This document shows, one piece after another, positions 5,877 through 43,391 of a DNA stretch of 64,000 nt. The translations under genes and the position numbers were made by a program. Location: the IMG/VR virus record IMGVR_UViG_3300012988_000001, positions 186,001 through 250,000 of that record, one strand, 5' to 3'. The first letter of the stretch is position 1, and each line of letters starts with the position of its first letter. The notes beneath the pieces are model-generated. The model saw nothing but the letters and a program-made list of their open reading frames with translations. It searched no databases and was not told the origin of the DNA.

Positions 5877-7622
5877 ATGAGTTGGACTAAATTTATGACA
5901 ACAGCGAGGTCGAAAGTATCGACCTCCAAAATAGAGCAAAGCAAAAGTCCTTCAAAGACAACTGGCTCTAAGTCGAATTACGCGTCATATTTGCCAGTAG
6001 TATATACTGGCTTATCTAACCGTACTGATCGATACAGACAATATGAACAAATGGACCAAGATCCTGAAATTAGAACTGCTCTTGATATTATCGCAGATTT
6101 TTGTACTCAAAGCGTTGAGGATTATGGTCTACCATTTAAAATTCGCTACAAAGATAATAGCATTGGTGATTCGGAAGTAACAACTTTAGAAGACCGTCTA
6201 GAATCATGGGCTGAACAAAATGATTTCAAAACTCGAATTTATGAAATTGTACGTGGACTTCTTAAGTACGGCGATCAATTCTTTATTCGTGACCCAGAAA
6301 CAATGGAATGGATTTGGGTATCACCTGCAAACGTAGAAGGTGTATTCGTCAACGAAGAAACTGGTAAAAATCCAGTTGCTTACTTTATTCGTGACGTTTC
6401 TTATAATATGCAGGATAAAATTTTCACAAACCTTCAAATAGGATATGACAAAATGGCATATCCGGGTACTATGCCAAACGCATTAGCAGGTTCTGCTAGT
6501 CAATTTGGTGGTATCGGTGGTGGTTATGCTAATGCTAGTAATGCTAACAGTGCAGACCCATTTAGTATGGCTGCTGGACGTAAAGATGTTATTCCAGTTG
6601 CAGCAGAACACGTTGTTCACTTAACTTTAAATACCGGACAAGACCCAGTATGGCCTTTCGGTACTAGTATTCTTGAATATATCTTTAAAGTATATAAACA
6701 AAAAGAATTACTAGAAGACAGTATCATCATTTATCGTGTACAACGTGCTCCAGAGCGTCGTGTATTCAAAATTGATGTTGGTGAAATGCAAACTCACCAA
6801 GCAATGGCATATGTTGAACGTTTCAAAAACGAAATCCACCAGCGTCGTATACCTTCTAATAAAGGTGGCAGTACTTCACTAATGGATGCAGCATATAACC
6901 CACTTAGTATTTTAGAAGACTATTTCTTCCCTCAAAGTTCTGAAGGTCGTGGTAGTTCTGTAGAAACATTACCGGGTGGTGATAACTTAGGTCAGATTGA
7001 CGACTTGCGTTATTTTAACAACAAATTAATTCGTGGTCTACAAATTCCAGCATCTTATCTTCCACAAGGTCCAGATGATGGTGGTGTAGCGTTATTTGGT
7101 GATGGTGCGACACAAGCTATGGCTAGTGAATTGCGTTTCAATAACCAATGTCAACGTTATCAACGTTTAATTGCGAAAGTATTTGATATGGAATTTAAAC
7201 GCTTCATGGTTAAAAGCGGTTATAGTATTAGTGCTTCATCCTTTGAAGTAATCTTCAATCCACCAATTAACTTTGCTTCTTATCGTAAAGCAGAATTGGA
7301 TGCGAAACTTATTAATACTTACATGCCACTTGATAGCTTAAGTTATATGTCTAAACAAACCATCCTTAAGAAAATGGGATTCGAACAAAGCGATATCGTA
7401 GAGAACGAACAAAATTGGCTCAAGGAAAATCCAGATGCAATGGAAAAACAAGCTGCTTCTGATGAAGCTGGATTACAATCTGTCGGTATTGATGCACCTA
7501 ACGATCCGGGTATGGATTTAGGCATGGATGAAGACGGTAATATGGAAAGTGCTGATAAAGAGTTCCAAGATATGGTTGGAAACAATGATTTTAACCCGAA
7601 TAATTTAGGTTCTTCTTTCTAA
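5877..7622 (+). CDS. portal protein (T4 gp20-like)
   Basis: LEDSIIIYRVQRAPERRVFKIDVG, EDYFFP, GSSVETLPGG, IDDLRYF motifs. Confidence 0.96.
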   Translation: MSWTKFMTTARSKVSTSKIEQSKSPSKTTGSKSNYASYLPVVYTGLSNRTDRYRQYEQMDQDPEIRTALDIIADFCTQSVEDYGLPFKIRYKDNSIGDSEVTTLEDRLESWAEQNDFKTRIYEIVRGLLKYGDQFFIRDPETMEWIWVSPANVEGVFVNEETGKNPVAYFIRDVSYNMQDKIFTNLQIGYDKMAYPGTMPNALAGSASQFGGIGGGYANASNANSADPFSMAAGRKDVIPVAAEHVVHLTLNTGQDPVWPFGTSILEYIFKVYKQKELLEDSIIIYRVQRAPERRVFKIDVGEMQTHQAMAYVERFKNEIHQRRIPSNKGGSTSLMDAAYNPLSILEDYFFPQSSEGRGSSVETLPGGDNLGQIDDLRYFNNKLIRGLQIPASYLPQGPDDGGVALFGDGATQAMASELRFNNQCQRYQRLIAKVFDMEFKRFMVKSGYSISASSFEVIFNPPINFASYRKAELDAKLINTYMPLDSLSYMSKQTILKKMGFEQSDIVENEQNWLKENPDAMEKQAASDEAGLQSVGIDAPNDPGMDLGMDEDGNMESADKEFQDMVGNNDFNPNNLGSSF

Positions 7623-7971: not shown

Positions 7972-7979
7972 TATAAATA
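7972..7979 (+). promoter_or_regulatory. T4-like late promoter
   Basis: TATAAATA. Confidence 0.7.
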
Positions 7980-8923: not shown

Positions 8924-9547
8924 ATGAGTATGATACGTGAGTGGTCTTCATTCAATGATTCTAAAATTGTACTAGAACACCGTGATAACCCGTTTGGTGG
9001 TAAAGATTGTTACCTTCGTGGTATTTCAATCCAAGCTGACCAACGTAATAAAAACGAACGCATCTACCCATTTGCAGAAATTGCACATGCGGTAGAGAAT
9101 ATGAATCAACGCTTAATGAGTGGTGAGAGCATTCTTTGTGAATGTGATCACCCTGAAACCTTAACCATTAACTTAGACCGTGTAGCAGCAATGATTACTA
9201 AAGTCTGGATGGAAGGTAAAAACGGTATGGCTGAAATCAAGCTACTACCAACATCTCATGGCGAGAATATTCGCAAGATGATCGAAAGCGGTGTGAAATT
9301 AGGTGTTAGTTCTCGTGGTTCAGGTAACGTTGATCATAATGGCATTGTTTCTGATTTTGAAATCGTAACTATTGACATTGTAGCACAACCAAGTGCTCCA
9401 GATGCGTATCCTACTGCGGTATTTGAATCTCTTATGAGTAAGTACGGTTCACCTCTTAGTGGAAGTAAAAAAGCAATAGTGGAATCTAAATCATCAAATG
9501 GTGTAGAAAACGAAATTCACGCTTTTTTTAAGAAATTAAAAGGCTAA
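8924..9547 (+). CDS. prohead protease (T4 gp21-like)
   Basis: N+NERIYP, CECDHP, LGVSSRGSG, DIVAQPSAPDA. Confidence 0.95.
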   Translation: MSMIREWSSFNDSKIVLEHRDNPFGGKDCYLRGISIQADQRNKNERIYPFAEIAHAVENMNQRLMSGESILCECDHPETLTINLDRVAAMITKVWMEGKNGMAEIKLLPTSHGENIRKMIESGVKLGVSSRGSGNVDHNGIVSDFEIVTIDIVAQPSAPDAYPTAVFESLMSKYGSPLSGSKKAIVESKSSNGVENEIHAFFKKLKG

Positions 9548-9558
9548 CAAAAAAAATT

Positions 9559-9566
9559 TATAAATA
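9559..9566 (+). promoter_or_regulatory. T4-like late promoter
   Basis: TATAAATA. Confidence 0.7.
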
Positions 9567-9614: not shown

Positions 9615-10733
9615 ATGTCTAAATTAGATAAGTTTCTAAATGAATCATCTCTTTCTGATGAAGCGAAACAGCTAATTCAGGAAGCATGGAATGAAGAAAA
9701 ACAAGCAGTCGCTGCTGAAATGCGTGAGGAAATGAAAGGTCGTTATCAAGAAGACCTAGCAAAACTCACAGAAGGGCTAGATAAAATGGTTACTCAAGTA
9801 ATTTCGGAAGAAATGAACGCAGTATATGACGAAAAAGCAAAACTCGTTGAAGACCGTGTTACTCTACGTAAAACCCTTGGCAACTTCGGTGCATTCGCTA
9901 ACGGCGTTCTAGCAGAAGAAGTTAAACAAATGCGTAATGAGCGTAAGCTCGTTAAAGAAAGTCTAGATAAATTCGCAGGGTTCTCTAACCGTATCCTAGC
10001 AGAAGAACTAAAAGACTTCCACCAAGAAAAACGTCAACTAGTTGAAACCCGCGTTAAACTAATTGCACAAGGTGCTCAACAAATTAATGAAGCTAAACAG
10101 CGTGTCATTAATCGTATCACTGAAACTTCCGCTCAATATATTGCTGAGACAACTCACAATAACCTAAAAGAGCTAAAGACAGAACTACGTGAAGCCCGTC
10201 AGAATATGTTTGGTCGTAAAATTTTCGAAGCCTTTGCTAACGAATTCTATAACAACCAATACAAAGAGAACTCAATCCTACGTTCTCTAAATGAATCTAT
10301 TAAACAGAAAGAATCTGAAGTAATTAGCATGAAAATGAAACTTCAAGAATCCGAAACTAAAGTAGAAGAAGCAAATACCAAAATGCGTATCATGGAAGAT
10401 ACACAAGCTCGTACTGCTATTATCTCCGAACTAGTTAAACCTCTTACTGTTCAACAGAAGCAAATCATGGAATCTCTACTTCAAGCTACCCCAACGGATA
10501 AACTTGACGCTGATTTCAGAAAGTACCATAAGTCAGTACTTAAAGGTACTATCAATGAGTCTGCTGCTAAAACCAGCCGCCCGGCAGTTAATACACAGGC
10601 AAAAAATACACTCACTGAAGGTAAAGTCGTAACTGGCAACCGTGATGGTATTCTTAAAGAAAGTGAACTCGATTCCGACGACCTAGATTTCCTAAAATCA
10701 CTAGAACGGAACGCAGGAATCCACAAAAAATAA
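9615..10733 (+). CDS. prohead core scaffold (T4 gp22-like)
   Basis: Long coiled coil between protease and capsid genes; FGRKIFEAF motif. Confidence 0.8.
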   Translation: MSKLDKFLNESSLSDEAKQLIQEAWNEEKQAVAAEMREEMKGRYQEDLAKLTEGLDKMVTQVISEEMNAVYDEKAKLVEDRVTLRKTLGNFGAFANGVLAEEVKQMRNERKLVKESLDKFAGFSNRILAEELKDFHQEKRQLVETRVKLIAQGAQQINEAKQRVINRITETSAQYIAETTHNNLKELKTELREARQNMFGRKIFEAFANEFYNNQYKENSILRSLNESIKQKESEVISMKMKLQESETKVEEANTKMRIMEDTQARTAIISELVKPLTVQQKQIMESLLQATPTDKLDADFRKYHKSVLKGTINESAAKTSRPAVNTQAKNTLTEGKVVTGNRDGILKESELDSDDLDFLKSLERNAGIHKK

Positions 10734-10769: not shown

Positions 10770-10813
10770 ATAACATACTGAAAAACGAAAAAACATCTTG
10801 AAGGAGATATATA

Positions 10814-11989
10814 ATGTCACAACTATTAACTGAATCTAAATGGGCTGCGGTTAAAGAGAAACTTGTTGAAGGTCTAAAAGACAATCGCAAAACCGTTATG
10901 GAAGCTGTTCTAGAAAACCACCGCAAAGTAATGCTACGTGAAAGTGCTTCACAAGGTGCTACCTCTGCTGGTAACATCGCAACGCTAAACAAGGTAATCC
11001 TACCTATTATGCGTCGTGTAATGCCTACCGTTATCGCTAACGAAATCATCGGTGTTCAACCTATGACTGGCCCTGTTGGTCAAATCCACACTCTACGTGT
11101 TCAATATGCTGACAACGCACCGGGCGTAATCGCTGGTGAAGAAGCACTATCACCGTACAAAATCGCAAAATCTTATACTGGTGAAGTAAACTCTGATAAC
11201 GATAATCCACGTGCTGCACCTACTAGCCAACTAGAAGGTACTATGGGTCGTCGCGTCAACATCCGTATCCTACGTGAAACCGTTGAAGCGAAATCTCGTC
11301 GTCTATCTGCTCGCTGGACCGTTGAATCTGCACAAGACGCTCAATCCCAACACGGTATCGACGTTGAAGCAGAACTAATGGCTGCTATCGCACAAGAAGT
11401 TACTACTGAAATCGACCAAGAACTACTTCACAAACTACGTGCTCTACCGGGTGCTGCTGCTGTAACTTATGACCAATCTAAAGTTACTGGTGTTGCTACC
11501 TTCGTTGGTGACGAACACGCCGCTCTAGCTACCCTAATTAACCGTCAAGCAAACGAAGTTGCTCGTCGTACCAAACGTGGTGCTGCTAACTGGGCTGTTG
11601 TTTCCCCAACTGCACTAACCATTCTTCAATCTGCTACTACTTCTAGCTTCGCTCGTACTACTGAAGGTACTTTCGATGCACCAACTAACGTTAAATTTGT
11701 TGGCGTACTAAACAGTACTATGAAGATCTACGTAGACACCTATGCTGATGATAGCACAGATGTATTGATCGGTTACAAAGGTAACGCAGAAACTGATGCT
11801 GGTGTATTCTATTGCCCATACATCCCACTAATGGCGTCTGGTACTGTAATGGACCCTAACACTGGGGAACTCGTTACAACGTTTCTTACAAGATATGGCT
11901 ACGTTCAACTTACCGATAGTACTTCATCTCTTGGTAACGCTGCTGACTACTTCAGCAAAATTGCAATCCGCAACGTAACCTTCATGTAA
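10814..11989 (+). CDS. major capsid protein (T4 gp23-like)
   Basis: RRVMPTVIANEIIGVQPMTGPVGQI, VEAKSRRLSARWT, YCPYIPL, TRYG; strong codon bias. Confidence 0.97.
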   Translation: MSQLLTESKWAAVKEKLVEGLKDNRKTVMEAVLENHRKVMLRESASQGATSAGNIATLNKVILPIMRRVMPTVIANEIIGVQPMTGPVGQIHTLRVQYADNAPGVIAGEEALSPYKIAKSYTGEVNSDNDNPRAAPTSQLEGTMGRRVNIRILRETVEAKSRRLSARWTVESAQDAQSQHGIDVEAELMAAIAQEVTTEIDQELLHKLRALPGAAAVTYDQSKVTGVATFVGDEHAALATLINRQANEVARRTKRGAANWAVVSPTALTILQSATTSSFARTTEGTFDAPTNVKFVGVLNSTMKIYVDTYADDSTDVLIGYKGNAETDAGVFYCPYIPLMASGTVMDPNTGELVTTFLTRYGYVQLTDSTSSLGNAADYFSKIAIRNVTFM

Positions 11990-19406: not shown

Positions 19407-19985
19407 ATGACAATTTATCAACGCATTGGGGAGGCTATTGCCTCCCAAGGAAAAGTAACATTAGTAGCAGCATTAACTCCAGCAGAGGAACATATTCTAA
19501 CTACTAGTGGCTTCAAGAAAGTCGGTACTATGGATCTTAATGGTACTAACATCGATCTATTTGAAGTTAAAGTAACGCAAGTAGTCAACGCACCAGTACC
19601 ACCATATAACGGAATCCGTACTCCATCTCCGGGTGTACAACCGTATAAGACTAATGATACATATCCACGCAAGTATGAAGCACAATGGCCTGAGAACTAT
19701 CGTCTATATACTTACGGTACTGGTACTCCACCAGATGTTCAATATCGTGGTAGTACTACATCTCTTGTAGATGCAGCTTACAATCCACTTAGTATTCTAA
19801 GTGATTATACCTTACCGGAAAATAAAACATTACTAAAAATTGATATTGGTTCTTTGTCAACTGATGAAGTCCAAAAGGTATGTGATGATATCAAACGTGA
19901 TTACACGCCACGTGTGTACACAAACGATAGCTGGACCTCTTATAATCAAGGCTATACTGGAAACCGTGATTTCCGTAGCTGGTAA
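19407..19985 (+). CDS. hypothetical protein with portal-derived segments
   Basis: AGGA SD; contains TSLVDAAYNPLSILSDY and KIDIG segments matching the portal. Confidence 0.75.
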   Translation: MTIYQRIGEAIASQGKVTLVAALTPAEEHILTTSGFKKVGTMDLNGTNIDLFEVKVTQVVNAPVPPYNGIRTPSPGVQPYKTNDTYPRKYEAQWPENYRLYTYGTGTPPDVQYRGSTTSLVDAAYNPLSILSDYTLPENKTLLKIDIGSLSTDEVQKVCDDIKRDYTPRVYTNDSWTSYNQGYTGNRDFRSW

Positions 19986-40043: not shown

Positions 40044-41588
40044 ATGAGCTTAGTAAACACGGACGTTAAACAATATGGAATTAACTATCAACTATATCTA
40101 CTATCAAAGGTCTTCAGTAATCCAGATGTATTTGTACGATGCAAGAACATCTTAAAACCTGAATATTTTGATAAAGAATTCCATAATAGCATTACCTTTG
40201 TGCACGAACATGCACAAAAATATAGTACAAGTCCATCCCTTAGTGATATTGAGATGAAAGGTGGCTTTCTTTACAGAAACGAAAAGATTCAAGCAATTGA
40301 TGAACAATCAGTACTTGATGATATTGGTGAATTCTGTCGTCATAAAGCACTAGCACTCGCAGTACAAAAAGGAATGGAATTAGTAAACCAAAAGAAATAT
40401 GGTGGTATCGAAGAACTGATTCGAGAAGCTATGTTAGTAACCGTACAGAATGAATTGGGTCTAGATGTATATGAAAACCCAGAAGAAACTATTCGCTCTT
40501 TGAATAGCAATCAAGGTTCATTCAAAACTGGTTGGGAAACATTAGACTTTAAACTACAAGGTGGTTTCGGTCGTCAAGAACTTGAAATCTTTGCGGCAGC
40601 ATCTGGTGGTGGTAAGTCTGTAGTACTACAGAACTTGGCAGTAAACTTCTCTAAGCAAGGGAAGGTTGGGGCATATATTTCCCTAGAACTAGCAGAGGAA
40701 CTAGTAGCAGTACGTATCTATTCAATGATGGTAAACAAGAAAGGCCAAGAGTTAAAATCTTCCCCTGAAAACTCAAGTATTCAGATTAAATTGGAAGAGA
40801 AGACTAGTGGTTCTTTACGTATTAAACGTATGCCTGAATCAGTTACGACCGTGAATGATATTGAAAGTTATCTTCGTGAACTACAAATTAAAACTGGCCT
40901 AAAGCTAGATTATGTTTGTGTGGATTATCTTGATCTATTAACTTCTGATCGTTGTGGGCCGAACGATGCATCAAACGCATTTGTTAAAGATAAATTCGTT
41001 TCGGAAGAATTACGTGCACTCGCAATGAAAATGGATATTACTGTTGTAACTGCTTGTCAGTTTAACCGTAGTGGTATTAGTGAAGAGAAAAAATCACAGA
41101 GTCAAATCGCTGGTGGTATTTCTAAGATCTATACTGCGGATAACGTAATTTACATTGAGGCAAAACGCGAAACTGGTGAAATGTGGTTTGACTTCCAGAA
41201 AACTCGTAACAGTGGTGCAGTTGGTTCTCGTCTACGTATGTCTTATAATATCGATAGCCTACGAGTACTCGACCATGCAATCACGGTACAGCAAATGGAA
41301 CTAGACGGCTTCGGCTTCAAGCATATGGGTTCATTCCCAATTGGTGGTGGAAACGCAGTCAGCGGCCCAGCAGTGGCCCAGCAGCAAACACCAATGCAGA
41401 TGCTACACTCTCACTTCCAAGCTACTCAGGCACAGTCACAGAGCGTTCCTGACCCTGTTTCTATACCTGCGGCCCAATCTCCCGGTATTCAAGATACTTC
41501 TATTTCTACTGGAATAAATACAACAAATGATCCAAGCAAGAACAATGTGAATCAGCTTGCCATCAGGAGTTTATTGAATAGGAAATAA
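40044..41588 (+). CDS. replicative DnaB-like helicase (T4 gp41-like)
   Basis: AASGGGKS, SLEL, VDYLD, ACQFNR, KTRNSG. Confidence 0.95.
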   Translation: MSLVNTDVKQYGINYQLYLLSKVFSNPDVFVRCKNILKPEYFDKEFHNSITFVHEHAQKYSTSPSLSDIEMKGGFLYRNEKIQAIDEQSVLDDIGEFCRHKALALAVQKGMELVNQKKYGGIEELIREAMLVTVQNELGLDVYENPEETIRSLNSNQGSFKTGWETLDFKLQGGFGRQELEIFAAASGGGKSVVLQNLAVNFSKQGKVGAYISLELAEELVAVRIYSMMVNKKGQELKSSPENSSIQIKLEEKTSGSLRIKRMPESVTTVNDIESYLRELQIKTGLKLDYVCVDYLDLLTSDRCGPNDASNAFVKDKFVSEELRALAMKMDITVVTACQFNRSGISEEKKSQSQIAGGISKIYTADNVIYIEAKRETGEMWFDFQKTRNSGAVGSRLRMSYNIDSLRVLDHAITVQQMELDGFGFKHMGSFPIGGGNAVSGPAVAQQQTPMQMLHSHFQATQAQSQSVPDPVSIPAAQSPGIQDTSISTGINTTNDPSKNNVNQLAIRSLLNRK

Positions 41589-41591
41589 TAC

Positions 41592-41873
41592 ATGTCTAGT
41601 GAAAAGAAAACACTTCTTGATAGTATCTTTAACTATACGCCGGAAAAAGGTAAATTACAGGAATTTAGTTCTAAAGCGGATAACGCTATTAATTCCGTGA
41701 TTTACCTGCTTGAGTATATTGATACGGAATTCAATCAAGACGATGCAGAAGATTTAAAGAAGCGTTTGTTTCTAAGTATCAAAAATCGGGACTATAAAAA
41801 GTTCCAACGTGGTTTAGATAACATTGCTCTTGATGAAAAACGACAATCTAAGGGAGGTCGATTAGATGAGTAA
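41592..41873 (+). CDS. hypothetical protein
   Basis: 93 aa ORF. Confidence 0.65.
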   Translation: MSSEKKTLLDSIFNYTPEKGKLQEFSSKADNAINSVIYLLEYIDTEFNQDDAEDLKKRLFLSIKNRDYKKFQRGLDNIALDEKRQSKGGRLDE

Positions 41874-42033
41874 GAAACTCAAAGAGAATGCTTCTTCTGG
41901 AGCAACAAGTGCAGGTAATATTGCATCTGTTAGTTCTGGATTACACTTTCCACTTCTAAAACGATTACCAGCGACAAACATCTTTGGTGGTTACACAGAA
42001 GTTAAAATGAAGGACAAGAAGGATAAAGAATGA
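41866..42033 (+). CDS. 55-aa protein mimicking mature capsid N-terminus
   Basis: GGAGG SD, overlaps both neighbours; MSKKLKENASSGATSAGNIASV...; below ORF-track cutoff. Confidence 0.8.
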   Translation: MSKKLKENASSGATSAGNIASVSSGLHFPLLKRLPATNIFGGYTEVKMKDKKDKE

Positions 42034-42431
42034 AACCATACACTTTTTACACGATTAATACGATTGTGGATATTGGTGATGGTAGTACTCCCGCAATAAT
42101 CGACGGAAAATTCACTGGTGCAATGAACCTATCAAGGATTGTTGATTCAGTAATGGAATACGATTATCCAATGATGGTAAGCGTAGTTAAAGATGAAGTT
42201 GATTTGTCCAAAGGGAATAATTCTGAATTTTATGGTTTACCTGCTTCGTGGGGTAAATGCATTGTAAGTACTTTCAAGTTCGCATTACCAGTTGATGTTC
42301 ATATCAACGTAAATGGAATACCATTAGTACTTCCAACTACTGTTAACAAAACCAGAATCACACGATTCAATATGGTTTCGTCAACTCGAAATCTTAGTAT
42401 TAGTAAACAGACATTTACTGTTTCTAAATAA
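42030..42431 (+). CDS. hypothetical, probably structural
   Basis: 133 aa; ATGA coupling. Confidence 0.6.
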   Translation: MKPYTFYTINTIVDIGDGSTPAIIDGKFTGAMNLSRIVDSVMEYDYPMMVSVVKDEVDLSKGNNSEFYGLPASWGKCIVSTFKFALPVDVHINVNGIPLVLPTTVNKTRITRFNMVSSTRNLSISKQTFTVSK

Positions 42432-42455: not shown

Positions 42456-43391
42456 ATGGATATTCAACAAACCGCAACGGAATTGCAAAAGTTCGCTGAT
42501 GCGAATGGTTTGCAGATGGATGTAACTCCAGTTTTAGATAGTATGGATGCAGGTGATTACGTATCACTTAATCAAGCTATGGATAATTCTGACAATAGAA
42601 GCATTCTATCAATTTTACAAAAATATAAATCCAGAACTCATGAGAGTTATGGTCACTTTGGTGCAAACTTAATCACTGAAGATGAAAGTATCAATATTGT
42701 AAACGATATGGGAACAGATGAACTCATTGAACATTACAATACAATCGAAGGTATGATTCACGGTACTGAACACTTGACATTACAAGAGCTAAAAACTATT
42801 GTATATGAAGATTTAATGTCCAACTTACGTGCCAATCAAATTGTTGGTCGTAATACCACCACACAACAGCAACAAGTAAACCCACAAACACAGGCTAAAG
42901 TTAAGCAAGCTGATATTCAGCGTAATGCCAACAACTCTGCGTTTAAAGTTTCAGTACCGGGTAATCAACAGGGTACTCAGCAAATTGAGCCAGTTGTGGG
43001 TATTGATCCGGGACCAACATCTCAACAAACTTTAGTCGTTACTAAAGACCAAGATCAACCAAATCAATTGGGTGTTTATAGTTTAGATGATGTTGAAACT
43101 GTTCAACAACAGGGTCAGACTAATATTAAAGAAGAACTTTCACCACAAGAAGCTAATGACGAAGTAATGGGTCCACCATCAGGTCATGATAATATTGGTG
43201 GCGGTCCAAGTACTTTTTCAAATACTGCTGCTGGAATGGGTGAAATTCGTCAAGCAATTGATAATGCAGTTAGTTCTAATGTCGAAGATGTAAGTGGTGA
43301 ACAAAGCCCTCTCGGTAATGACGCAACACAAGCAGGTGATGATATGATTGACCAAATTATTGATTTCTGCACACGCATGAGAGGAAGATAA
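42456..43391 (+). CDS. hypothetical Q/N-rich protein, probably head-associated
   Basis: 311 aa; ITE/IKE sites. Confidence 0.6.
   Translation: MDIQQTATELQKFADANGLQMDVTPVLDSMDAGDYVSLNQAMDNSDNRSILSILQKYKSRTHESYGHFGANLITEDESINIVNDMGTDELIEHYNTIEGMIHGTEHLTLQELKTIVYEDLMSNLRANQIVGRNTTTQQQQVNPQTQAKVKQADIQRNANNSAFKVSVPGNQQGTQQIEPVVGIDPGPTSQQTLVVTKDQDQPNQLGVYSLDDVETVQQQGQTNIKEELSPQEANDEVMGPPSGHDNIGGGPSTFSNTAAGMGEIRQAIDNAVSSNVEDVSGEQSPLGNDATQAGDDMIDQIIDFCTRMRGR

What the first reader, a model, noticed from the sequence alone, without database searches (positions are those of the whole stretch)
41866..42033. Unannotated 55-aa ORF copies the capsid protein's cleavage site and mature N-arm
Seen: LKENASSGATSAGNIA matches capsid LRESASQGATSAGNIA (10934-10981) at 13/16 with different codons, then FPLLKRLP parallels LPIMRRVMP. 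It has a strong GGAGG SD and is coupled to both neighbours. Inference: a processed minor head protein filling N-arm grooves at symmetry-mismatched sites (portal or vertex), an assembly regulator, or a decoy for capsid-sensing defences (CapRel- or Lit-type). With the portal mimic at 19407, it may indicate a self-mimicry strategy.
Basis: partly seen in the sequence, partly recalled or inferred. Interest (0 to 1): 0.7.

Follow-up and report, generated by a model that had tools for sequence, protein, structure and literature searches.

The report
Small protein copying the capsid N-terminus
A real, conserved 55-residue gene of a Rak2-like jumbo phage copies the cut site and first 30 or so mature residues of the phage's own major capsid protein; it is probably cut by the head protease during assembly, but its job has never been tested.

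Summary
ORF 41866-42033 encodes a 55-aa protein whose residues 5-39 match capsid residues 41-74 (17/35 identical, E 2e-7). A family profile hits only this ORF and the capsid gene in the 366-kb genome, and profile-profile probability is 96%.

The gene is real. It keeps its place (primase, helicase, ~90-aa virion protein, this ORF) in at least 14 Rak2-like phages and in distant metagenomic relatives. dN/dS is about 0.19. It belongs to PHROG 17311 (function unknown) and is annotated "hypothetical protein" in most relatives, but is missing from the RaK2 record.

The copy is old and kept by selection: synonymous sites are scrambled. Eight of the twelve invariant capsid residues in positions 43-72 recur as invariant or near-invariant residues in the small protein. 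A hydrophobic-x-Glu protease motif always precedes the shared core.

In distant jumbo phages the same module is the C-terminal tail of 150-700-aa proteins.

Best reading (about 0.45): it enters the prohead as a mimic of the capsid N-terminus and is cut after Glu7. Groove-filling, decoy and regulator roles remain untested. The portal-segment copy at 19407 is also real and conserved.

The parts
41866..42033 (+). 55-aa gene, member of PHROG 17311 (capsid-N-terminus-like peptide)
   Evidence: ORF; PHROG 17311 E 1.5e-25; conserved in synteny; median dN/dS 0.19
41852..41857 (+). Shine-Dalgarno GGGAGG, 8 nt before the ATG
   Evidence: read from the sequence
41866..41886 (+). Lys-rich leader M1-E7 ending in Leu-Lys-Glu, the inferred prohead-protease site (cut after E7)
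   Evidence: E7 is invariant, with L/I/V at -2 from it, in all 18 family members and in all but one of the 22 module copies listed from the distant hits; that copy starts too close to the core to carry it. Cleavage itself is inferred.
41887..41970 (+). Capsid-like segment N8-P35. By alignment to T4 gp23 it corresponds to the second half of the N-fist plus the N-arm.
   Evidence: BLASTP and hhalign; T4 numbering and PMC7136217/PMC9546572; shared invariant residues
41971..42030 (+). F-G-G-Y block and Lys-rich C-terminal tail (A36-E55)
   Evidence: F40 and G42 invariant, Y43 near-invariant; a K/R-rich tail is present in nearly all members shown
10814..11989 (+). Major capsid protein, T4 gp23 family (PF07068)
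   Evidence: PHROG 138 E 1.5e-99; T4 gp23 structures E about 1e-39; PF07068 on its homologues
10934..11035 (+). Capsid residues 41-74: inferred maturation site (L41-x-E43, cut before S44) plus the mature N-terminal arm, the template of the copy
   Evidence: E43, A45, G48, G53, A56, P64, R68 and P71 are invariant in 49 capsid proteins. 121Q capsid protein runs at 37 kDa against 42.2 predicted (PMC5646251). RaK2 capsid protein also runs low (PMC3622015).
8924..9547 (+). Prohead maturation protease (T4 gp21 type), the presumed processing enzyme
   Evidence: PHROG 207 E 1.5e-57
9615..10733 (+). Presumed scaffold/core protein, judged from its position between the protease and capsid genes; the homologous phAPEC6 gene next to the capsid gene is listed as scaffolding protein
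   Evidence: PHROG 10922, function unknown; gene order; phAPEC6 table in PMC7247149
41592..41873 (+). 93-aa virion protein, always immediately upstream and translationally coupled; predicted helical bundle
   Evidence: PHROG 11854 'virion structural protein'; MS-positive in CBB_292 (PMC5259590) and annotated as virion or structural protein in GAP32, BF, A4 and PHA46; homologues in distant phages; AF2 pLDDT 82.6
42030..42431 (+). 133-aa virion protein, downstream, start overlaps the small ORF's stop
   Evidence: PHROG 14976; CBB_294 detected by MS
42456..43391 (+). 311-aa virion protein; its homologue directly follows the module ORF in distant relatives
   Evidence: PHROG 14883
41514..41520 (+). 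ATAAATA late-promoter-like motif inside the helicase 3' end, 78 nt before the 93-aa gene
   Evidence: ATAAATAC kept at -67 to -78 in 8 of 14 phages, CTAAATAC in 3 more. It matches the CBB late consensus (PMC5259590 Table S7). Function is inferred only.

Best explanation
The gene encodes a stand-alone copy of the major capsid protein's maturation site and mature N-terminal arm, followed by a Lys-rich tail.

The most likely course of events:
1. It is made together with the flanking virion proteins.
2. It enters the assembling prohead through the contacts that the capsid protein's own N-terminus makes there. In T4 this segment lies inside the unexpanded shell, probably against the scaffold core.
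3. The gp21-type prohead protease cuts it after Glu7, as it is inferred to cut the capsid protein after Glu43.
4. This leaves a 48-residue peptide whose first residues mirror those of the mature capsid protein.

In distant relatives the same module is the C-terminal tail of 150-700-aa proteins. The module therefore probably works as a detachable head-targeting or anchoring tag, and this gene is a cargo-less version.

Shown: conservation, purifying selection, significant and ancient similarity, a shared set of invariant residues, the conserved protease motif, conserved synteny among virion genes, and the fused forms. Inferred: entry into the prohead, cleavage, binding partner, and the fate of the peptide.
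For: - Significant similarity restricted to the ORF and the capsid gene in the whole genome.
- Purifying selection: median dN/dS 0.19 over 90 pairs. Two strain variants in a public run are both synonymous.
- Old age with retained residues: synonymous sites are scrambled.
- Capsid invariants E43, A45, G48, G53, A56, P64, R68 and P71 line up with the small-protein invariants E7, A9, G12, G17, A20, R33, P35 and the near-invariant P29.
- Hydrophobic-x-Glu directly precedes the core in all 18 close members and in all but one of the 22 module copies in distant hits, whether the module is N-terminal, C-terminal or stand-alone.
- The genome encodes a gp21-type protease.
- Relatives' capsid proteins run about 5 kDa light (PMC5646251, PMC3622015). 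That fits removal of 43 residues.
- The module sits at the C-terminus of P0150 (701 aa, LysM) and P0157 (603 aa), in the same genomic position after the helicase and the 81-aa homologue of the 93-aa protein.
- The neighbours are virion proteins in the annotations of several relatives, with MS data seen for CBB.
- A late-promoter-like motif lies upstream of the cluster.
- T4 precedent: gp23 residues 66-105 are disordered and internal in the unexpanded head and probably contact the core (PMC9546572).
Against: - None of the annotated relatives examined lists the product as a virion protein. This is weak evidence: the CBB proteome used 12% gel slices, RaK2 searched full tryptic peptides against annotated ORFs only, and RaK2 lacks the ORF in its annotation.
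- No experiment shows cleavage at E43 or E7 in this clade.
- The leader is only 7 residues, so there is no cargo in this version and the peptide's own function stays open.
- The complex prediction with two mature capsid subunits gave no answer (ipSAE 0.01).
- Three other jumbo phages with the same capsid type (63-66% identity) showed no separate module, so it is not universal.
- Transcription timing is ambiguous. The cluster may also be read from the primase promoter, and no terminator separates them.
Confidence: 0.45

Rival explanations
1. Minor capsid protein of the mature virion. After cleavage the 48-residue peptide stays bound in sites that normally hold a neighbouring subunit's N-arm but are empty next to the portal or the pentons. 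Its Lys-rich tail may face the DNA.
For: - It shares the invariant residues of the N-fist/N-arm segment.
- In T4 this segment makes intra- and inter-capsomer contacts after expansion, and the N-fists facing the portal are disordered (PMC9546572, PMC7136217).
- The genome has no gp24-like capsid paralogue, and phAPEC6 counts 1620 capsid-protein copies, the hexamer positions only (PMC7247149). N-arm sites around pentons could therefore be vacant.
- T4 shows unassigned peptide density under the vertex protein (PMC9546572).
- P1 DarA is a protease-processed protein bound at penton-hexon junctions and touching DNA (PMC12810830).
Against: - It is never listed among virion proteins, although about 55-60 copies of a 5-kDa peptide would be hard to detect.
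- In T4 the N-fist/N-arm ends up on the outside of the expanded shell. A free internal peptide would have to get there.
- Complex prediction gave no answer.
- The fused forms on 600-700-aa proteins fit a tag better than a lattice filler.
Confidence: 0.15
2. Assembly regulator. By occupying the scaffold or protease site used by the capsid N-terminus, the small protein tunes capsid-scaffold stoichiometry, or delays or primes maturation cleavage. It is then degraded or lost.
For: - It has the same motif and the same protease site as the capsid protein.
- T4 length mutations A94V and G97S map to this very segment, and capsid N-terminus-scaffold contacts influence head size (PMC9546572).
- Absence from virion proteomes would be expected.
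Against: There is no direct evidence. The conserved Lys-rich tail and F-G-Y block are unexplained. The fused versions are not obviously regulators.
Confidence: 0.15
3. Cytoplasmic mimic acting outside the head. It could be a decoy for a host defence that senses the capsid protein (Lit/Gol or CapRel type), or a binder of a host factor that the nascent capsid N-terminus engages (EF-Tu, chaperonin).
For: - The capsid-like stretch precedes and just touches the most conserved block of the capsid protein. [quoted passage not shown]
- The gene may be co-transcribed with primase and helicase, that is, before late genes.
- A second head-protein mimic (of the portal) exists.
Against: - The copy ends at R33-x-P35, the equivalent of capsid R68-P71. 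It lacks the most conserved block that follows, roughly capsid residues 72-95.
- Strict conservation of the protease motif is unexplained by a cytoplasmic role.
- There is no same-genome co-variation with the capsid protein: 10.4 against 10.6 of 18 identities, permutation p 0.85.
- No PADLOC or defence context was examined.
Confidence: 0.1
4. Chance similarity or a decaying fragment of a duplicated capsid gene with no function.
For: It is short, compositionally simple (Ala/Ser/Gly-rich), and no function is known.
Against: E-values 2e-7 to 3e-9; dN/dS 0.19; conserved synteny over saturated synonymous distances; its own Shine-Dalgarno and coupled starts.
Confidence: 0.02

Closest known systems
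T4 capsid-targeting-sequence proteins (IPI-III, Alt) and other gp21 substrates
   Same: They are carried into the prohead by a short peptide that the prohead protease removes at a hydrophobic-x-Glu site. This is established T4 knowledge; the core components and cleavages are listed in PMC9546572.
   Different: The T4 tag is a roughly 10-residue N-terminal peptide, not known to me to resemble gp23 (from memory; not compared here). Here the conserved part lies after the cut, copies the capsid protein's own mature N-terminus, carries a basic tail, and in relatives sits at the C-terminus of the cargo. No packaging experiment exists.
N-fist / N-arm of T4 gp23* (residues about 78-105)
   Same: Sequence homology to the equivalent capsid segment, with the Gly, Arg-Arg and Pro positions conserved as far as T4.
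   Different: It is a free 55-aa protein without any HK97-fold body. Pfam finds no Gp23 domain in it.
Phage P1 DarA/Hdf
   Same: An internal head protein whose N-terminus is removed by the prohead protease. It is bound to the inner capsid surface at penton-hexon junctions and contacts DNA through a positive surface (PMC12810830).
   Different: No sequence relation was seen. DarA is 639 aa and folded. Its capsid binding is not by mimicry of the capsid N-terminus.
PHROG 17311
   Same: The ORF is a member (E 1.5e-25), as are the modules on P0148-P0159.
   Different: The family has no assigned function. I found no paper describing the link to the capsid N-terminus.

Membership tests
PHROG 17311 (unknown function) | Profile match over the whole protein | tested here: met
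   E 1.5e-25, residues 3-52 on profile 4-52 of 54
Substrates of T4-type (gp21) prohead protease | Leu/Ile/Val-x-Glu motif at the cut site, conserved across homologues | tested here: met
   E7 invariant with L/I/V two residues before it in 18/18 members and in all but one of the 22 module copies in distant hits. The same motif occurs at capsid L41-x-E43.
Substrates of T4-type (gp21) prohead protease | Demonstrated cleavage in proheads | not testable with these tools
   No N-terminal sequencing or semi-tryptic MS for this clade was found (PMC3622015, PMC5259590, PMC7247149)
Substrates of T4-type (gp21) prohead protease | A gp21-type protease encoded by the same phage | tested here: met
   Window 8924-9547, PHROG 207 E 1.5e-57
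Major capsid protein, Gp23 family (PF07068) | HK97-fold body with the Gp23 domain | tested here: not met
   No Pfam hit. Only 35 residues align, and only to the N-terminal arm.
Virion structural proteins of Rak2-like phages | Detected in purified virions by mass spectrometry | tested here: not met
   Annotated 'hypothetical' in the 13 relatives where it is annotated, while neighbours are structural. CBB_293 is absent from the CBB MS table. The methods were biased against 5-kDa peptides.
Capsid decoration/cement proteins (Soc, gpD and similar) | Sequence relation to a solved decoration protein | tested here: not met
   The profile search of the PDB gave only weak PsaE and MutY hits, E at least 0.065
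Gol-type activator peptide of Lit | Covers the most conserved block of gp23-type capsid proteins (here about residues 67-95) | tested here: not met
   The alignment stops at capsid residue 74. The block that follows, IANE..GVQPM..., has no counterpart.
T4 CTS-bearing internal proteins | N-terminal CTS consensus and injection with the DNA | not tested
   No T4 internal-protein sequence was fetched, so the comparison rests on memory only

The most novel reading that the evidence does not exclude
Jumbo phages of the Rak2 supergroup use self-mimicry of head-assembly interfaces as a general device. One element is a portable module that copies the capsid protein's cleavage site and N-arm; it is stand-alone here and C-terminal on 150-700-aa proteins elsewhere. 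It would load, anchor or time proteins in the prohead and be detached by the head protease. A second conserved protein copies a portal segment in the same way.
Probability: 0.3. Interest if true: 0.75.

Novelty: new variant of a known kind. Interest (0 to 1): 0.6.

Why it matters
If the module carries proteins into the head by imitating the capsid protein's own N-terminus, it would be a second, mechanistically different capsid-targeting signal beside the T4 CTS. It would be directly usable for loading cargo into very large phage heads.

It would also show how giant capsids recruit internal or ejected proteins. The stand-alone peptide could bear on how T=28 shells handle vertices without a gp24-type protein.

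It also gives a concrete, testable role to a conserved 'hypothetical' gene that sits among virion genes in every Rak2-like phage examined.

Tried and rejected
1. Complex prediction of two mature capsid subunits plus the mature peptide gave ipSAE 0.01, 'no answer'. It is not evidence either way.
2. AlphaFold2 of the 133-aa neighbour gave pLDDT 55 and is unusable. The 93-aa neighbour is a confident helical bundle, pLDDT 82.6, but has no meaningful PDB fold match, best E 4.7.
3. Same-genome co-variation or gene conversion between the small protein and the capsid protein is absent: 10.4 against 10.6 identities of 18, p 0.85.
4. Public runs: contigs hold the locus, but transcription cannot be shown and a polyA RNA run had no reads. 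The only yield was two synonymous variants.
5. PDB searches found no solved Rak2-like capsid and no chain matching the small protein. The PhiKp24 capsid paper concerns a different, much larger capsid protein.
6. tblastn of the fused protein P0157 and of P0151 against isolated phages found no match.
7. A frameshift fusion of the 93-aa and 55-aa ORFs was rejected. The small ORF has its own strong Shine-Dalgarno, and in GAP32, CBB and others the two genes do not overlap.
8. A sigma-70 promoter and terminator scan of 37.5-49 kb showed nothing above the shuffled background.
9. The ESM Atlas feature search returned only unnamed viral clusters.
The permitted alignment A1 was used instead.

Full report
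**Where the window lies.** The window is bases 186001-250000 of a 366,160-bp IMG/VR virus record with direct terminal repeats. The region around the finding is about 81% identical in DNA to Salmonella phages Munch, 7t3, PHA46 and SE_PL and to Klebsiella phage fENko-Kae01. It is more distantly related to RaK2, K64-1, 121Q, PBECO4, GAP32 and CBB, so this is a Rak2-like jumbo myovirus. The head module reads portal (5877-7622), gp21-type protease (8924-9547), presumed scaffold (9615-10733), then major capsid protein (10814-11989). The capsid protein belongs to the T4 gp23 family.

**The observation.**
- The ORF runs from 41866 to 42033 (55 aa). It has GGGAGG 8 nt upstream, a start that overlaps the stop of a 93-aa gene, and a stop that overlaps the start of a 133-aa gene.
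- Residues 5-39 align with capsid residues 41-74: 17/35 identical, 27/35 similar, E 2e-7.
- A profile of 18 homologues finds exactly two places in the whole genome: the ORF (1.3e-31) and the capsid N-terminus (6.1e-7).
- Profile-profile comparison gives 96% probability, E 2.9e-9.
- The capsid protein scores against PHROG 17311, the small-ORF family, at E 0.0026.
- At the DNA level the shared 20 codons are 55% identical, and only 3 of 13 identical-residue codon pairs are the same codon. The copy is therefore old, and the protein similarity is held by selection.

**It is a real gene.**
- Homologues occupy the same slot (primase, gp41-type helicase, ~90-aa virion protein, this ORF, 130-aa and 310-aa virion proteins) in PHA46, 121Q, GAP32, CBB, fHe-Yen9-04, XbC2, XaC1, pEa_SNUABM_50, Serratia BF, A4, CMSTMSU, Hallingskeid and EJP2. 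An unannotated copy is present in RaK2.
- The same order holds in divergent metagenomic phages.
- Pairwise dN/dS has a median of 0.19 while dS is near saturation.
- Two variants in a public run (41901 A>G, 41979 C>T) are both synonymous.
- The product is annotated 'hypothetical protein' in the 13 relatives where it is annotated. Its neighbours carry 'virion structural protein' labels, and for CBB the MS table was seen directly.

**Anatomy of the family**.
- A Lys-rich leader ends in (L/I/V)-x-E.
- Next comes x-A-S-x-G-A-T-S-A-G-x-I-A-S-V.
- A short variable linker follows, then P-L-x-x-R-L-P.
- Then comes F-F-G-Y and a Lys-rich tail.
- In 49 capsid proteins of this type, residues E43, A45, G48, G53, A56, N59, L63, P64, R67, R68, V69, P71 and T72 are invariant in this stretch.
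- Eight of the twelve that fall in positions 43-71 (E43, A45, G48, G53, A56, P64, R68, P71) align with invariant or near-invariant residues of the small protein (E7, A9, G12, G17, A20, P29, R33, P35).
- Against T4 gp23 the capsid segment maps to residues about 78-109. That is the second half of the 'N-fist' (66-91) and the 'N-arm'.
- In T4 this region is disordered and internal in the unexpanded head, probably on the scaffold core. After expansion it forms intra- and inter-capsomer contacts. The length mutations A94V and G97S map to it (PMC9546572, PMC7136217).
- The capsid cut after E43 is inferred from the L-x-E motif and from gel sizes: 121Q 42.2 to 37 kDa (PMC5646251), and RaK2 also runs low (PMC3622015). 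I found no N-terminal sequence.

**A wider family.** A full HMM search of 1.84 billion representatives gave 22 hits at E up to 1e-3.
- Besides 49-73-aa stand-alone proteins, the module forms the C-terminus of P0148 (147 aa), P0155 (170 aa), P0158 (294 aa), P0157 (603 aa) and P0150 (701 aa, with a LysM domain). It occurs twice in P0159.
- A hydrophobic-x-Glu motif immediately precedes the core in all but one copy. The exception, P0152, begins only four residues before the core.
- In these versions the second block (P-M-M-P-V-I-R-R-M-P) resembles the capsid and T4 sequence more closely than the window's does.
- P0157 lies on a 452,799-bp phage whose capsid protein is 69% identical to the window's. 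It sits after the helicase and the homologue of the 93-aa protein, so the position is syntenic.
- The rest of P0157 has no counterpart in the window's genome.
- Three other jumbo phages with this capsid type showed only the capsid hit. Their capsid proteins read Y-L-K-E then N-A-S-A-G-S-T-S-A-G-N-I-A, closer to the window's small ORF than the window's own capsid protein is.
- There is no same-genome tracking between the small protein and the capsid protein. The likeness is a shared static constraint, not concerted evolution.

**Interpretation.** Two proteins that keep the same invariant residues over saturated synonymous distances most simply share a partner. The protease motif glued to the core, in N-terminal, C-terminal and free versions alike, points to the prohead as the place and to the gp21-type protease as one partner. 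The fused forms suggest a detachable tag that brings or anchors proteins by imitating the capsid N-terminus. The window's gene would be a cargo-less version whose 48-residue product has its own, unknown role. I put about 0.45 on prohead entry plus cleavage. The peptide's later fate is divided among:
- a lattice-site filler at vertices or portal (0.15);
- a competitor or regulator of capsid-scaffold-protease contacts (0.15);
- a cytoplasmic mimic (0.1).

The Lit/Gol version of the decoy idea fits poorly, because the copy ends where the most conserved capsid block begins (PMC3014915).

**Expression.** An ATAAATAC motif lies 67-78 nt before the 93-aa gene, inside the variable helicase tail, in 8 of 14 phages, and CTAAATAC lies there in 3 more. 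It matches the predicted late-promoter consensus of CBB and GAP32 (PMC5259590). The same bases also encode a conserved (I/L)-N-T, and CBB's own list does not include this site. No terminator separates the cluster from the primase promoter. Timing is therefore open.

**The companion claim.** ORF 19407-19985 (192 aa, PHROG 25089) carries residues 114-139 that match portal residues 329-354: 17/26 identical, E 7e-9. This block is the best conserved part of that family, and in relatives it is nearly identical to the portal sequence. Some members even carry a Portal_Gp20 Pfam hit. It aligns to roughly residues 312-339 of T4 gp20. An all-against-all comparison of 615 ORFs of the genome found these two as the only short copies of recognised head proteins. 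A self-mimicry pattern therefore exists at the sequence level. Its purpose is unknown.

**Negative and uninformative results.**
- The complex prediction gave no answer.
- The 133-aa neighbour folded poorly.
- The 93-aa neighbour is a helical bundle without a fold match.
- No solved structure or paper describing the small protein was found.
- P1 DarA is the nearest structural precedent for a protease-processed, shell-bound, DNA-touching internal protein (PMC12810830).

**Verdict.** The gene is ordinary in being a known 'hypothetical' family. The capsid-N-terminus mimicry, its protease motif and its modular spread appear undescribed and are experimentally tractable.

Noticed in passing
window 19407-19985 (aa 114-139 = 19746-19823) versus portal 5877-7622 (aa 329-354 = 6861-6938): The 192-aa protein (PHROG 25089) carries a 26-residue copy of a portal segment: 17/26 identical, E 7e-9. 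It is the most conserved block of that family, and in relatives it is nearly identical to the portal sequence. It aligns to roughly residues 312-339 of T4 gp20.
   Followed up: partly
window 41513-41520 and the same position in L001, L004-L007, L009, L010: An ATAAATAC late-promoter-like motif lies inside the helicase 3' end, 67-78 nt before the 93-aa virion gene. It is kept across diverged sequences, and Hallingskeid, EJP2 and XaC1 have CTAAATAC. It also encodes (I/L)-N-T, so promoter and protein constraint cannot be separated.
   Followed up: partly
L003:1501-1653 (RaK2 JQ513383 120706-120858); K64-1 AB897757 about 120654-120776: No annotated feature lies under the small-ORF match in the RaK2 and K64-1 GenBank records, although in RaK2 the frame is intact and conserved (K64-1 was not read). 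RaK2's MS search against annotated ORFs could not have found it.
   Followed up: yes
whole genome G000; window 10814-11989: No gp24-like paralogue of the capsid protein exists in the genome. The only secondary hits are the small ORF and a weak 35-residue match at G000:86304-86417 (E 0.03, outside the window). The identity of the penton protein is open.
   Followed up: partly
L034:8923-11028 (P0150) and L035:10001-11812 (P0157): These are large proteins with Gly-rich, possibly membrane-like stretches. P0150 also has a LysM domain. Both end in the capsid-like module and have no homologue in isolated phages. They may be internal or ejected head proteins of 450-kb-class phages.
   Followed up: partly
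profile A2 against the PDB: Many PsaE (photosystem I subunit IV) chains match residues 17-43 of the family profile at E 0.07-1 (G-x-V-A-S-V...Y-P-V-I-V-R-F...Y-x-G-Y). This is probably chance.
   Followed up: no
window 42091-42325: One high-depth contig of a wastewater run (X7) joins 42091 to 42325, skipping 233 nt of the 133-aa gene, but with only 20 letters on the short side. It is likely a related phage or a chimeric contig.
   Followed up: no
window 7972-7979, 9559-9566, 10770-10780: TATAAATA or GATAAATA motifs lie in the intergenic regions just upstream of the 291-aa virion protein, the presumed scaffold and the capsid gene. This is consistent with T4-like late promoters in this phage.
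   Followed up: partly
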